From Haplodiscus bocki (Eukaryota): a stretch of 64,000 nucleotides of DNA. The translations under genes were made by a program, and so were the position numbers. Below the pieces are notes generated by a model. It did not search any database. It was not told the DNA's origin and saw only the letters and a list, made by a program, of their open reading frames with translations. Where the stretch lies: NCBI GenBank assembly GCA_965655095.1, contig OZ296650.1:51894001-51958000 (forward strand), in the 5' to 3' direction. This document shows, one piece after another, positions 15,201 through 18,915 of the stretch. Every line of letters starts with the position of its first letter. Position 1 is the first letter of the stretch.

Positions 15201-16869
15201 GCTTGATATCTTTAGGTATCAAATCCCTGTCCTTTAGCCAGTTTAAGGCCCTCCGTAATCTATTTTCAACCGACTTCGATTTTGTGACAGCGCGACTGTA
15301 GGTAATTGTTAGTAGTCCCTGCTGGCTTCTTGTATAATATAAACATTTGTCATCTCCAGTATGTAAAGGGAGAGGGGATTCCATTGTTAATTGCCTAAAA
15401 ACCTCTCAGAAGTTCCATTACATATAATTCCAATACAGTCAAGATTTTGTTCTGTTCAAACATATATCCAACACTATCATATTTTTTTTCCTGAAAAATT
15501 GCGCGTAGTATTCTTCGTTGAGCTTTCAAATTTTGGGGTATAGGTTTCGCTGCAACTCCATATGTCAGTTTTCCGTATTAAATGATCGATTTTTCAAAGG
15601 AAGTGTAGAACAACAATAAGCACATTATGGGATAAATTGACTTGATAAGTCAATCAATTGAATTTATTGAACTTTTTGACGACATACTCAATATGATCAT
15701 GAAAATGTAGCTTTTGTCCAGTCTCACTCCAAGCTATTTACACGCGATTCGCATAGAAAATTTCTCGGTGGTTAGCATCAAATCCTTCAGTGTACCAATC
15801 CCAAAGTCAATAATTTCAAATTTTGGAATATTTGACGACAGTTTGTTCTAAGAAAACCAGTTGTTTGTTCGATCCATGTCCGTTTGTAAATCCCACTAGT
15901 TTCGTGGGCCAGCCTTCACAATAGAAGTATCATCCGCGAAAATGCCAATATCTAGGCAAATCATCAATACAGACTAAGAACAGGAATGGACTCAAGATCG
16001 ATCCTTGAGGCACGCCACCGTTTTGTATTTTTTCAGTCTTATCGTTATCGGTCTCTATATACTAAAACCTATTTCGCTCAATATTTCAAAGATTGGTCCT
16101 GTGTAACCATAAGTTTATAATCTTTTCAACAGCATTGAATGATCAAGGGTGTCGAACCTTTTCCGGAGATCAATGAAACAGGCTTGGCCCAGTGTTTTTT
16201 TGTCAATTTTTTCTCCTAAGTAGTCACTCGTAGTACTAATTGCACGAACTTGTTTTTCGAAATCCAAGTTGCTTCGATGCAAACAACTCATTTCACGAAA
16301 AAGCGAACCATGCGATTATACAAAAGCTTCTCGAAGAGTTTGCTCATCGAACATAACAAACCTATCGACCTCTAGTTTTCTGGAGATATTTTTAAGTCTT
16401 TTTTTTTGGAAATCGGAACAACTTTGGCTAATTTCAAAAAAGCTGAAATTTTTCCATGATGCTGTTGTTGAAAGTTTCAGTGAAGTATTTCTCAATTACG
16501 GGGGAACATTGTTTTTTACATTTAATTGCTTAATTTGTCATGACCAACACTGTTTTATTTATTTGTCCGTTTATTATCCCGCGAAAAGCGGGATATTGCA
16601 ATCACCTTCGTGTGTCTGTTTGTTTGTTTGTTAGCAGGATTTCTCATAAACTACTGGTCGGATTTTGATGAAATTTGGTGAGTAGGGAGGTAATGATCAT
16701 AGGAAGACCGAGTTCAAAGTTGGGCGTGATCCGGATTGAAATCCGGATCTGAGATCCGGATAACTGTTTCTCATGAACTACTGGTCGGATTTTGGATCAG
16801 GACCTCAATCAGATCCAGGATAATAGTAATCTGATAATAGTAATCTGATAAGAGTAATCAGATGAGTAC

Positions 16870-16943
16870 GGCCCTATAGCTCAGTCGGTAAGAGCATTGT
16901 GCTAAAAACGCGAGGGTCGAGTGTTCGAACCTCTGTGTGGCCA
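16870..16943 (+). tRNA. tRNA-Ile(AAT)-derived gene/pseudogene with AAA anticodon, copy 1
   Basis: 74 nt; A box TAGCTCAGTCGG, B box GTTCGAACC, anticodon loop CT-AAA-AA, T6 terminator downstream. T-stem has mismatches. Confidence 0.7.
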
Positions 16944-16997
16944 AAATTTTTTGTTAATCTGATAATAGTAATCTGATAATAGTAATCAGATAAGTAC

Positions 16998-17071
16998 GGC
17001 CTTATAGCTCAGTCGGTAAGAGCATTGTGCTAAAAACGCGAGGGTCGAGAGTTCGAACCTCTGTGTGGACA
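16998..17071 (+). tRNA. tRNA-Ile-derived gene/pseudogene with AAA anticodon, copy 2
   Basis: Same 74-nt body, 128 bp downstream of copy 1. The acceptor stem has extra mismatches (ends GGACA). Confidence 0.65.
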
Positions 17072-17280
17072 AAATTTTTTGTTTGTCTGTTTGTTTGTTT
17101 GTTAGCAAGATTTCTCAAAATAGGAGGTAATGTATATCAACGACTGGCTTACGATCCAGGATATCCTGTTGGATCCTGATAACAGTTATCTGGAGATACT
17201 GATTGGATCAGGATTTCAATCAGATCCAGGATAATAGTAATCTGATAATAGTAATCTGATAAGAGTAATCAGATAAGTAC

Positions 17281-17354
17281 GGCCCTATAGCTCAGTCGGT
17301 AAGAGCATTGTGCTAAAAACGCGAGGGTCCAGAGTTCGAACCTCTGTGTGGCCA
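17281..17354 (+). tRNA. tRNA-Ile-derived gene with AAA anticodon, copy 3 (best cloverleaf)
   Basis: Acceptor stem GGCCCTA/TGTGGCC (one mismatch), D stem GCTC/GAGC, anticodon stem TTGTG/CGCGA, perfect T stem CAGAG/CTCTG, T6 terminator. Confidence 0.75.
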
Positions 17355-17408
17355 AAATTTTTTGTTTATCTGATAATAGTAATCTGATAATAGTAATCAG
17401 ATGAGTAC

Positions 17409-17482
17409 GGCCCTATAGCTCAGTCGGTAAGAGCATTGTGCTAAAAACGCGAGGGTCGAGAGTTGGAACCTCTGTGTGGACA
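17409..17482 (+). tRNA. tRNA-Ile-derived pseudogene with AAA anticodon, copy 4
   Basis: Same body. B box mutated (GTTGGAACC) and ends GGACA. Confidence 0.6.
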
Positions 17483-18915
17483 AAATTTTTTGTTTGTCTG
17501 TTCGTTCGTCTGTTTGTTTGTTTGTTTGGCGAGGGAAAGATCAAGGGCTTTCGCGGGATCTGCGCTCTCCGAGTGCCATTTTCTAGTTATTTGTGTGACT
17601 AAATATTCGTCAGAGTAATTGAGTATCATTGTTTTTTTGGTACGTTCACTGGGCAATCAGAATCTGGGACTTTGGATGATAGTATGATAGAATTTGCCCG
17701 AAAGATATGAACTTTTCATTGAGTTTCTTAATGTCTGGGATGCTGTTTTTGGTTCATATTTCGCCAGTTAAAACTTCAGTGTGCGGTATATAGTTTTTCT
17801 GGAGGGGTTATGTCCAATTTTTTTTGTATTTACAATGTCGCTGGGCATTTCTAGATATTTCTTCTCTGAAGCTTTTAGTTGAACTGACTACTGTGGTGAC
17901 TTTTACTGACATATCTGAAGAAACATGTCTGAGGAACTTCTAAAATCAACTTTTCGAACCTCTTTGTATAGTAGACATTAGAGGACTGTCACAAATCAGT
18001 AAATTGGGTGTCAAGATTTGGCACAATTGGAATTTGAAACTGTCAGAACTGCCAGTATACCAAGGTTAAGAGGCAAAAGCCTCCACAGAAATATTATCTA
18101 TTGTTAATAATTAATGAAATTGAATGTTTTTCCACAATCATTTCCATCCCAAACTCTCATTTTACTGGAAATGGAAATGATCGTATGTAGCGATAAATTT
18201 CAGCGGACTTTTGACAATCGTTATCAATGGACTTCGCCGGGATAAAAATTTAAATTGAAATACCGTGTGTGGGTTTCGTGTACACTGTTTCTGAGGCACT
18301 GTACGGCGTATATTCAATATCATAATAATTCAACAACGCTTCAAGATTTTTAACGTAGCAAGACGTTCACACTAAATGTAAACGACTTTGAGCCTTTCGT
18401 AAAAGCTTTGTTTGTACACTAATTGATCGAATAATTTCCTTCGGTGATATTTTACGTCGGAAAATATATTAAATTATAATAAAAATATAATTGTATTATA
18501 CGTTATAATATTAATGATGATAGAGTACCAAAATATAATTCTCCAAAACTCACGATTACTTAAAAATGCCTGGACTTTTCTCTGCGATCTTTTAGGTTTT
18601 TTGAAGCAGTAATGGAATGAATTTTCTTAATACATGTTCAGAAAAGTTGAAATTTCCTATTTGATTTCTCATATAAAAGCTGCAGAAAATGAGGGTTTTG
18701 TTTAATTTCGAAAAAATAGTTTTTGCTTTCATTCTGAAATCAACGGAAATAGTCAATAATTTTTTAGTTTTCGCACTTTTGAGAATTGCCAAAAAATTAC
18801 TAGAATAAAAAAGAAAAAACTTTGGTTTCAACATAAAAGATCGTCTTGTTGATTCTTGAATAATTTATGGAATCGATCGTCGAGTTATTTTGGATTTTTT
18901 TGTTCTTTATTTTAG

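What the first reader, a model, noticed from the sequence alone, without database searches (positions are those of the whole stretch)
16571..17588. Helentron-type element whose internal tandem repeat is a complete Pol III tRNA transcription unit (four copies)
Seen: a HINE/DINE-1-like element (subterminal inverted repeats, 5' and 3' hairpins, CTAG end) contains four 74-nt tRNA bodies at 16870, 16998, 17281 and 17409. They are spaced 128 bp within pairs and 411 bp between pairs. Each is preceded by 14-bp GATAATAGTAATCT repeats and followed by a T6 terminator. Established: such elements capture host DNA and amplify internal tandem repeats, but the repeats are usually anonymous. Inference: a rolling-circle DNA element is spreading tRNA genes with their A/B boxes and terminator. 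That could disperse TFIIIC-binding/insulator sites, produce tRNA-like small RNAs, and inflate tRNA gene counts in this genome.
Basis: partly seen in the sequence, partly recalled or inferred. Interest (0 to 1): 0.75.

Follow-up and report, generated by a model that had tools for sequence, protein, structure and literature searches.

The report
Rolling-circle transposon carrying tRNA-gene repeats
This is one of roughly a thousand or more copies of a short rolling-circle transposon whose internal repeats were copied from the host's isoleucine tRNA gene with its promoter boxes and terminator; its protein-coding parent element carries the same repeats, but nothing shows they still work.

Summary
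Four 74-nt tRNA-like units lie at 16870, 16998, 17281 and 17409, each preceded by a 14-bp minisatellite and followed by T6. They sit in a 1,013-bp element (16575-17587) with an 11-nt subterminal inverted repeat, a strong 5' hairpin and a CTAGT end.

The element is a HINE-type non-autonomous rolling-circle transposon:
- Six paralogous empty sites show precise insertion between T and T with no target duplication.
- The genome holds 997 exact 5' ends and 823 exact 3' ends.
- All 34 bounded copies I could read carry 3-9 tRNA units.

The units derive from the host tRNA-Ile(AAU) gene. They differ from it at 6 of 74 positions, have anticodon AAA, and keep the A and B boxes.

New here is a putative autonomous parent of about 12.5 kb. 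It has the same two ends, a 5-kb expanded tRNA-cassette array, and an open 2,203-codon frame (DUF6570, OTU, Rep, PIF1). At least eight Rep-bearing copies are 97-99.5% identical.

The tRNA parts decay like the rest of the element and the master copy already has stem mismatches, so function is unshown. No RNA data exist.

The scan noted other copies of this family in the same genome before (s1-359428, s1-381302). I found no published precedent for this cargo.

The parts
16575..17587 (+). Whole non-autonomous element (HINE type), 1,013 bp. The boundaries have a 4-nt TTAT ambiguity.
   Evidence: The ends are shared by 19 full-length copies at 91-97% identity, whose flanks are unrelated. Paralogous empty sites confirm the boundaries.
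16575..16595 (+). 5' terminal palindrome TATCCCGC-GAAAA-GCGGGATA. It contains the 5' subterminal inverted repeat at 16576-16586.
   Evidence: Inverted repeat I11 is 100% complementary. The DNA fold is -8.7 kcal/mol, z -3.9. The exact 29-mer occurs 997 times in the genome.
16596..16791 (+). Left module. It includes a TTTG-rich stretch at 16607-16649 and a 28-nt direct repeat at 16640-67 and 16767-94.
   Evidence: Direct repeats D2 and D3. The module is 98.7% identical to the family consensus.
16792..17091 (+). Cassette pair 1: 14-bp minisatellite, tRNA-like unit 1, T6, minisatellite, tRNA-like unit 2, T6.
   Evidence: Direct repeat D1 is 97% identical to 17203-17502. TRF reports a 128-bp period.
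16870..16943 (+). tRNA-like unit 1, derived from tRNA-Ile(AAU), anticodon AAA. T6 at 16947-16952.
   Evidence: (42.6 bits).
16998..17071 (+). tRNA-like unit 2. T6 at 17075-17080.
   Evidence: (41.2 bits).
17092..17202 (+). Middle module. Its part at about 17117-17165 lies directly before the 3' terminus in the Rep-bearing deletion copies L073 and L074.
   Evidence: The joint 17165>17542 is seen in reads.
17203..17502 (+). Cassette pair 2, a duplicate of pair 1.
   Evidence: Direct repeat D1 at 97%. The joint 16792>17203 in reads shows that one-pair variants exist.
17281..17354 (+). tRNA-like unit 3, the best preserved. A G-to-C change restores a T-stem pair. T6 at 17358-17363.
   Evidence: (56.3 bits).
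17409..17482 (+). tRNA-like unit 4. Its T loop reads TTGGAA instead of TTCGAA, which I read as loss of the invariant B-box C. T6 at 17486-17491.
   Evidence: (35.3 bits).
17489..17528 (+). TTTG microsatellite. Inner copies of head-to-tail arrays are truncated here.
   Evidence: TRF. Array copies end at query positions of about 938-943. The 5' flanks of L014 and L021 show the truncation.
17549..17587 (+). Right terminus. It holds the 3' subterminal inverted repeat (17549-59), a short imperfect palindrome GCGCTC/GAGTGC (17562-76) and the terminal CTAGT (17583-87).
   Evidence: The exact 29-mer occurs 823 times in the genome. The palindrome is weak as a fold.
16171..16574 (.). Host of the insertion: an older dispersed repeat that continues at 17588 to about 17860.
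   Evidence: At least 40 copies at 71-80% identity. In six of them the left and right flanks are contiguous, which gives the empty sites.

Best explanation
The stretch is one copy of a young, high-copy, non-coding rolling-circle transposon of the Helentron/HINE kind. It is a deletion derivative of a parent element of about 12.5 kb in the same genome.

The parent has the same 5' and 3' ends. It encodes a single open frame of about 2,203 codons with DUF6570, an OTU protease, a Rep nuclease and a PIF1 helicase. Between its 5' end and that frame it already carries the tRNA-cassette array.

The cassette was copied from a host tRNA-Ile(AAU) gene together with its downstream T-run terminator. It was then multiplied inside the element as a tandem repeat, each unit preceded by a 14-bp minisatellite. 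The copy number varies between family members, from 3 to 6 in single elements and about a dozen higher-order repeats in the parent.

The parent's Rep/helicase mobilises the short element in trans. Insertion is between two Ts and makes no target-site duplication.

The tRNA cargo keeps the internal Pol III promoter boxes and a terminator, so it could still bind TFIIIC or be transcribed. As a tRNA it is almost certainly dead, and I see no evidence that it is under selection. The most likely reading is neutral cargo that inflates tRNA predictions.

Shown: anatomy, family, insertion mode, origin of the cassette, and the autonomous partner. Inferred: trans-mobilisation, neutrality of the cargo, and any Pol III activity.
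For: Family and ends:
- Many full-length copies at 91-97% identity share ends but have unrelated flanks.
- The genome holds 997 exact 5' 29-mers and 823 exact 3' 29-mers. Reversed-pattern controls gave 0.

Insertion mode:
- Six paralogous empty sites read GTCCGTTTAT|TATTTGTG.
- The filled site equals that sequence plus the element, with no duplication.
- 18 of 19 copies have T on each side.

Origin of the cassette:
- Genuine tRNA-Ile(AAT) genes are clustered at C5:79.53-79.56 Mb.
- The element unit differs from them at 6 of 74 positions.
- The A and B boxes are identical, and the trailer is similar (aaCTTTT against aaATTTTTT).

Decay of the cassette:
- Rfam scores are 33-56 bits against 63-67 for the genuine genes.
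- The cloverleaf energy is -12.6 to -18.4 kcal/mol against -24.4.
- Each unit has 1-3 non-pairs already in the family consensus.
- Identity to the consensus is 97.7-98.4% for the tRNA units and 94.8-98.7% for spacers and modules.

Autonomous partner, all on the + strand of C1:
- 5' terminus at 147361955.
- A 5-kb cassette array.
- An open frame from 147367480 with DUF6570, OTU and Helitron_like_N.
- PIF1 at 147372052-642 in the same 2,203-codon frame.
- A 3' module at 147374143-411, including the exact 3' 29-mer at 147374377.
- The same array-to-ORF junction on C8, C2074, C2, C3 and C6.
- Rep regions of seven further copies that are 97-99.5% identical to it.

Rolling-circle signature:
- Head-to-tail arrays whose inner copies are truncated at the 3' end, as described for Helitron-superfamily elements in PMC7492417.
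Against: - The last 727 residues of the parent's frame could not be read. The endonuclease that defines a Helentron in the strict sense is therefore unconfirmed, and GIY-YIG was not seen there among the 150 scored candidates.
- The 3' hairpin is no better than shuffled sequence.
- Neutrality rests on 19 copies chosen for similarity to the query.
- Absence of function cannot be shown without RNA or ChIP data, and none is available.
- Copy census figures are lower bounds. Short size classes (terminus distances of 413-670 bp on C1) were not read, so a cassette-free subfamily is not excluded.
Confidence: 0.85

Rival explanations
1. The tRNA cassettes are functional for the transposon or the host. 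They could act as Pol III/TFIIIC-bound units that insulate the element, and the transposase gene just downstream of the array, from silencing. They could also serve as dispersed boundary elements or as a source of tRNA-like small RNAs.
For: - The A box and, in units 1-3, the core of the B box are identical to those of the genuine gene, and every unit keeps a T6 terminator.
- The array sits directly upstream of the ORF in every autonomous copy examined.
- The cassette is retained in all 34 bounded copies read.
Against: - The tRNA units and their boxes are not conserved above the spacers.
- Unit 4 of the master copy has lost what I read as the invariant B-box C.
- Unit number drifts freely between 3 and more than 12.
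- No expression data exist.
Confidence: 0.1
2. The units are heads of a tRNA-derived SINE, a retroposon, that happen to be nested in another repeat.
For: - tRNA-derived sequences with A and B boxes are the usual SINE heads.
- Automatic pipelines would flag these units as such.
Against: - Each unit ends at the tRNA 3' end plus T6. There is no SINE body, no A-rich or LINE-derived tail and no target-site duplication.
- The units always lie at the same place and in the same orientation inside the element.
- The ratio of cassette cores to termini is about 3.5-4, which fits all units being inside these elements or their expanded arrays.
Confidence: 0.02
3. It is a real host tRNA gene cluster, working genes in tandem, and not transposon cargo.
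For: - Animal genomes do hold tandem tRNA clusters, and this genome has one for tRNA-Ile on C5.
- The units pass the Rfam threshold.
Against: - About a thousand dispersed copies share transposon ends, and precise empty sites exist.
- Anticodon AAA is, to my knowledge, not a standard eukaryotic isoacceptor.
- The consensus has stem mismatches.
- Decay is uniform across the element.
Confidence: 0.02

Closest known systems
HINEs (Helentron-associated interspersed elements), including DINE-1 of Drosophila and the mite and Culex HINEs (Thomas, Vadnagara and Pritham 2014, PMC4067079)
   Same: - Subterminal inverted repeat 1-2 nt from the 5' end, palindromic at the 5' end.
- Second arm about 30 nt from the 3' end, with a short palindrome near that end.
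- Insertion at TT without a target-site duplication, confirmed by paralogous empty sites.
- Internal microsatellite and tandem repeats.
- Copy number far above that of the coding partner.
- A partner with Rep/helicase and an OTU protease.
   Different: - The internal repeat is a recognisable host gene, tRNA-Ile with its boxes and terminator. In described HINEs it is anonymous satellite-like DNA.
- The endonuclease of the partner was not confirmed here.
- The 3' arm lies 28 nt from the end, against 38-60 nt in the paper.
- The 3' palindrome is weak.
Cg_HINE elements of the Pacific oyster, and pearl, DTC84 and MgE of other bivalves (PMC7492417, PMC3879986)
   Same: - Two flanking modules enclose a short array of tandem repeats in a fixed orientation.
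- Repeat number varies between copies.
- Some elements carry two arrays.
- Whole elements occur in tandem with 3'-truncated inner copies.
- The repeats seed satellite-like arrays.
   Different: [quoted passage not shown] Here complete boxes and a whole tRNA body are present.
- I do not know whether this genome is a mollusc.
tRNA-Cys cluster of Arabidopsis thaliana chromosome 5, which overlaps annotated Helitrons (PMC10701932)
   Same: tRNA genes sit in tandem repeat units associated with rolling-circle transposon annotation.
   Different: - In Arabidopsis it is a single locus, and three Helitron predictors gave no reliable element there.
[quoted passage not shown]
- Here the ends, the empty sites, about 1,000 dispersed copies and a coding partner are all demonstrated.
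tRNA-derived satellites such as Xenopus satellite 1 and Hydromantes Hy/Pol III (listed in PMC9659126)
   Same: Tandem repeats descend from a tRNA-related Pol III unit.
   Different: Those are traced to SINE-like retroposons, whereas this repeat is carried by a DNA rolling-circle element.

Membership tests
HINE / non-autonomous Helentron | Subterminal inverted repeats of about 12-15 bp, a few nt from the 5' end and tens of nt from the 3' end | tested here: met
   The 11-nt perfect repeat lies at 16576-86 and 17549-59. It is 1 nt from the 5' end and 28 nt from the 3' end.
HINE / non-autonomous Helentron | Short palindrome (stem-loop) near the 3' end | tested here: inconclusive
   GCGCTC-TCC-GAGTGC at 17562-76 is conserved in the family. 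Its DNA fold is -4.5 kcal/mol, z -0.25, and 83 of 200 shuffles fold as well.
HINE / non-autonomous Helentron | Insertion at TT or T-rich sites without a target-site duplication, shown by empty sites | tested here: met
   Six paralogous empty sites. T flanks both ends in 18 of 19 copies.
HINE / non-autonomous Helentron | Autonomous partner with the same ends that encodes Rep and helicase | tested here: met
   The C1:147361955-147374411 copy has both termini, Helitron_like_N and PIF1 in one 2,203-codon open frame. The junctions are repeated in other copies.
Helentron in the strict sense | AP endonuclease fused to the C-terminus of Rep/helicase | not tested
No GIY-YIG hit appeared there among the 150 scored candidates. 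An OTU protease, frequent in Helentrons, is present.
Functional nuclear tRNA gene | Cloverleaf with intact stems and a score comparable with the genome's genuine genes | tested here: not met
   Scores are 33-56 bits against 63-67. The family consensus has 1-3 non-pairs per unit.
Functional nuclear tRNA gene | Purifying selection relative to neighbouring sequence | tested here: not met
   Identity to the consensus is 97.7-98.4% for the units and 94.8-98.7% for spacers and modules. The sample is 19 copies and is biased.
Functional nuclear tRNA gene | Internal A and B boxes and a downstream T-run | tested here: met
   The A box is identical to the genuine gene in all four units. The B-box core is intact in units 1-3 and changed in unit 4. 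T6 follows each unit.
Functional nuclear tRNA gene | Transcription, processing and charging | not testable with these tools
   No RNA runs were on record for this organism.
tRNA-derived SINE | tRNA head plus body plus tail, flanked by target-site duplications, dispersed as single units | tested here: not met
   The units stop at T6, are tandem, and sit at a fixed place inside the element. There is no tail and no duplication.

The most novel reading that the evidence does not exclude
A still-active rolling-circle transposon has domesticated a host tRNA gene as a working cis element. In this reading the Pol III/TFIIIC-bound cassette array directly upstream of its transposase gene acts as an insulator or anti-silencing device, or produces tRNA-like RNAs. 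The roughly 1,000-2,500 short derivatives would then have seeded thousands of extra TFIIIC sites across the genome.
Probability: 0.1. Interest if true: 0.8.

Novelty: new variant of a known kind. Interest (0 to 1): 0.5.

Why it matters
Rolling-circle transposons are known to capture protein-coding gene fragments and to spread anonymous satellite repeats. A 2023 paper (PMC10701932) states that a confirmed tRNA capture would be the first non-coding RNA gene captured by a Helitron-family element. This case has defined ends, empty sites, about a thousand copies and a coding parent.

The practical consequences are:
- Thousands of false tRNA predictions with anticodon AAA in this genome.
- A ready-made natural experiment on whether dispersed A/B-box units recruit TFIIIC.
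- A traceable example of how a gene becomes a transposon-borne tandem repeat and then a satellite-like array.

Tried and rejected
- Expression. The look-up of sequencing runs returned no RNA run, so Pol III activity could not be tested. Read laying used contigs only.
- C-terminal part of the parent's ORF. I did not try to obtain those letters by another route.
- GIY-YIG family search in the own genome. It hit only the other, roughly 17-kb Helentron-like family, and only 150 of 218 candidates were scored, so the result is inconclusive for this element.
- PF03372 (AP endonuclease). I did not search it, because LINE copies would swamp the 150 scored candidates.
- Organism identity. Names are coded, and I did not pursue it. 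I therefore could not check Repbase- or Dfam-style family names or species-specific literature such as MgE of Mytilus, whose paper is not in the library.
- SINE, host tRNA cluster and TIR-MITE readings. All were rejected (see the rival explanations). There is no target-site duplication, the ends are asymmetric, and the partner is Rep/helicase.
- Literature. Seven searches found no report of tRNA cassettes in HINEs or Helentrons. The library lacks most subscription journals, so absence there is weak evidence.
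Full report
**Observation**

ARAGORN finds exactly four tRNAs in the 64-kb window, all on the + strand. They lie at 16870-16943, 16998-17071, 17281-17354 and 17409-17482, and all have anticodon AAA. Rfam's tRNA model scores them 42.6, 41.2, 56.3 and 35.3 bits against a gathering score of 29.

Tandem Repeats Finder reports a 128-bp period across 16827-17494. 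It also finds the 14-bp unit GATAATAGTAATCT in 2.5-3.4 copies before each tRNA body. A T6 run follows three bases after each body.

A 300-bp block at 16792-17091 recurs at 17203-17502 with 97% identity, which gives the 411-bp spacing between pairs.

The 11-nt motif ATCCCGCGAAA at 16576-86 is perfectly complementary to 17549-59. The 5' arm is part of a palindrome that folds well as single-stranded DNA (-8.7 kcal/mol, z -3.9). The proposed 3' hairpin does not beat shuffled sequence (z -0.25).

The only qualification is that the 3' hairpin is weak.

**It is a transposon family, and the cassette belongs to it**

A search of the window's own 1.5-Gb assembly with the element gave 1,488 first-look candidates. 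It returned dozens of full-length copies at 88-97% identity, all covering query positions of about 12-1029.

In 19 full-length copies the similarity starts at TATCCCGCG and ends at CTAGT, and the flanks are unrelated. The exact 29-mer of the 5' end occurs 997 times and that of the 3' end 823 times. The reversed-pattern controls gave 0. A 35-nt core of the tRNA unit, with up to 2 mismatches, occurs 3,525 times.

ARAGORN calls tRNAs with anticodon AAA in 27 of 29 further loci. The occasional AGA, ATA, AAG and GAA anticodons are what random decay would produce.

In the loci I hold, each of the 34 intervals bounded by a 5' and a 3' terminus carries tRNA units. Single elements carry 3 to 6, and their lengths track the unit number: 851 bp has 3, about 975-1050 bp has 4, about 1115-1135 bp has 5, and 1282 bp has 6. 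This sample is biased towards the 4-unit form because I searched with it.

Pairing the listed termini on contig C1 gives distances from 413 to 3,039 bp. By arithmetic the short classes would hold one or two units, but I did not read them.

**Insertion mode**

The window copy is nested in an older repeat with at least 40 copies at 71-80% identity. In six of those copies the left and right flanks are contiguous and read GTCCGTTTAT|TATTTGTG. The window reads the same sequence with the 1,013-bp element in between and no duplicated bases.

A 4-nt TTAT microhomology leaves the cut ambiguous. However, 18 of 19 copies have T before TATCCC and T after CTAGT. This fits insertion between two Ts, as described for Helentrons and HINEs (PMC4067079, PMC7492417).

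Head-to-tail arrays occur at C12:48.69 Mb, C4:72.64 Mb, C11:70.17 Mb, C3:24.11 Mb and C2:24.52 Mb. Their inner copies stop in the TTTG microsatellite and lack the 3' end. PMC7492417 describes the same pattern for tandem elements of the Helitron superfamily. Contigs of public runs of the same organism show the corresponding joint (17592>16570). They also show joints for one-pair variants (16792>17203), and they bridge both junctions of this insertion exactly.

**Origin of the cassette**

The genome has genuine tRNA-Ile(AAT) genes, mostly in a cluster at C5:79.53-79.56 Mb. They score 63-67 bits.

All four consensus units of the element share six differences from the genuine gene (L034:1469-1542, minus strand):
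- one in the acceptor stem, which breaks a pair;
- one in the D loop;
- one in the anticodon stem, giving a wobble pair;
- the third anticodon base, changing AAT to AAA;
- two on the 3' side of the T and acceptor stems, one of which breaks a pair.

The A box and the B-box core are unchanged. The trailer resembles the genuine one (aaCTTTT against aaATTTTTT). The captured piece was therefore a tRNA-Ile gene with its terminator.

Each of the four unit positions also has its own change already fixed in the family consensus:
- unit 1 has a T-stem mismatch;
- units 2 and 4 have an acceptor mismatch;
- unit 3 has a compensating change;
- unit 4 reads TTGGAA in the T loop, which I take to remove the invariant B-box C.

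The cloverleaf energy falls from -24.4 kcal/mol for the genuine gene to between -12.6 and -18.4. Identity to the family consensus is 97.7-98.4% in the tRNA bodies and 94.8-98.7% in spacers and modules. Only the 5' terminus stands out, at 99.7%. The master copy was therefore already a degraded tRNA, and the copies decay evenly.

**The coding parent (the main addition of this follow-up)**

A search for Helitron_like_N (PF14214) in the genome found a group of about 120-bit hits. One of them, at C1:147369799-147370407, lies in a 2,203-codon open frame just downstream of a HINE-like array seen.

Reading the contiguous loci L027, L083 and L061 shows the following order, all on the + strand:

| Feature | Position on C1 |
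|---|---|
| Single 5' terminus | 147361955 |
| About 5 kb of tRNA cassettes (about a dozen 411-bp higher-order repeats, 12 more ARAGORN tRNAs) | after the 5' terminus |
| A piece of the left module | after the array |
| Open frame, first ATG at 147367516 | starts 147367480 |

The readable 1,203 residues carry DUF6570 (89 bits), an OTU protease (41 bits) and Helitron_like_N (118 bits). PIF1 lies at 147372052-642 in the same frame. A frame of 2,203 codons ends near 147374089.

A 268-bp 3' module follows at 147374143-411, and it contains the exact 3' 29-mer at 147374377.

The element is thus about 12.5 kb: 5' end, left module, tRNA array, ORF, 3' module.

This is not a chance juxtaposition:
- The array-to-ORF junction recurs on C8, C2074, C2 (two places), C3, C6 and C7.
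- The 3' module recurs at the expected distance in the same copies.
- The Rep regions of seven further copies are 97-99.5% identical to the C1 copy.

L073 and L074 are deletion derivatives that join an ORF fragment to the 3' module. The part of the window's middle module at about 17117-17165 lies directly before the 3' terminus in those copies. The short element is therefore the parent with the coding part removed and, in this 4-unit form, a second cassette pair added.

I could not read the last 727 residues. Whether an endonuclease is fused to the helicase is open, and 'Helentron' is used here in the structural sense.

**What it most likely does**

The short element is moved in trans by the parent's Rep/helicase. 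This is inferred from the shared ends. The near-identical, open-frame parents and the low divergence suggest recent activity.

The tRNA cargo is most likely neutral. It could still bind TFIIIC, or be transcribed from intact boxes to the T6. A product with anticodon AAA and broken stems is unlikely to serve in translation. That last point rests on my own knowledge of tRNA identity rules, not on a test. No RNA run was available, so this part remains inference.

**Comparison with what is known**

The structure matches HINEs as defined by Thomas et al. 2014 (PMC4067079). It also matches the repeat-carrying HINEs of bivalves (PMC7492417).

For pearl and DTC84 the authors explicitly found no complete Pol III boxes (PMC3879986). 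A 2023 study of an Arabidopsis tRNA-Cys cluster could not confirm a Helitron there and noted that a confirmed case would be the first ncRNA captured by a Helitron-family element (PMC10701932).

Seven full-text searches gave no report of a tRNA cassette in a HINE or Helentron. The library is incomplete and the organism's name is hidden from me, so a species-specific description cannot be excluded.

**Earlier notes of this scan**

Two other copies of this family in the same genome were noted before (s1-359428, s1-381302). The follow-up on the second reached the same reading: a HINE whose cargo derives from tRNA-Ile, with function unshown. I re-derived this independently here. I added the empty sites, the per-unit consensus decay, the unit-number series and the coding parent with its own cassette array.

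Note s1-354045 describes a different, roughly 17-kb Helentron-like family with a GIY-YIG nuclease in this genome. My GIY-YIG search hit that family and not this one.

**Verdict**

This is a real, well-defined feature. It is a new variant of a known kind of element, of moderate interest, and no function has been shown for the cargo.

Noticed in passing
G000:C1:36144255-36200660 (not fetched): More than 50 cassette cores lie on the + strand over about 50 kb. A 3' terminus lies at 36200632, and no exact 5' terminus is listed nearby. This looks like a satellite-like expansion of the tRNA-cassette array.
   Followed up: no
L039:2226-2299 (minus strand), inside the genuine tRNA-Ile cluster on C5: One decayed cluster copy also has anticodon AAA and a T6 trailer, the two features that mark the element's unit. 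It does not share the other four changes. It may be the source lineage of the capture, or a coincidence.
   Followed up: partly
G000:C1:135925358, C11:40631145, C11:40633725: Three units of the element type (GGTAAGAGCATTGTG) keep the anticodon AAT. These are either back-mutations or relics of the state before the anticodon change.
   Followed up: no
window 16171-16574 and 17588 to about 17860: The element is nested in an older, unclassified dispersed repeat with at least 40 copies at 71-80% identity. That repeat supplied the empty sites.
   Followed up: partly
run X5 (organism B), laid on window 16571-16793: A 457-nt contig of a second species matches the left module with 4 differences and 4 gaps. 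It stops matching exactly where the tRNA cassette begins, and the cassette region has almost no depth in that run. A relative may carry the same flank with a different internal repeat.
   Followed up: no
G000:C1 terminus pairs, for example 3827119/3827744 and 14445857/14446474: A tight size class of nine copies has 617-634 bp between the 5' and 3' terminal motifs. It probably corresponds to left module, one cassette pair, middle module and 3' end. I did not read these copies, so their unit content is unknown.
   Followed up: no
L083:2876-3091 region and its copies on C8, C2:145.1 Mb and C7:93.85 Mb: A segment of about 216 bp spanning the start of the parent's open frame is tandemly duplicated in some autonomous copies. 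Query positions 477-692 match two or three times in a row.
   Followed up: no
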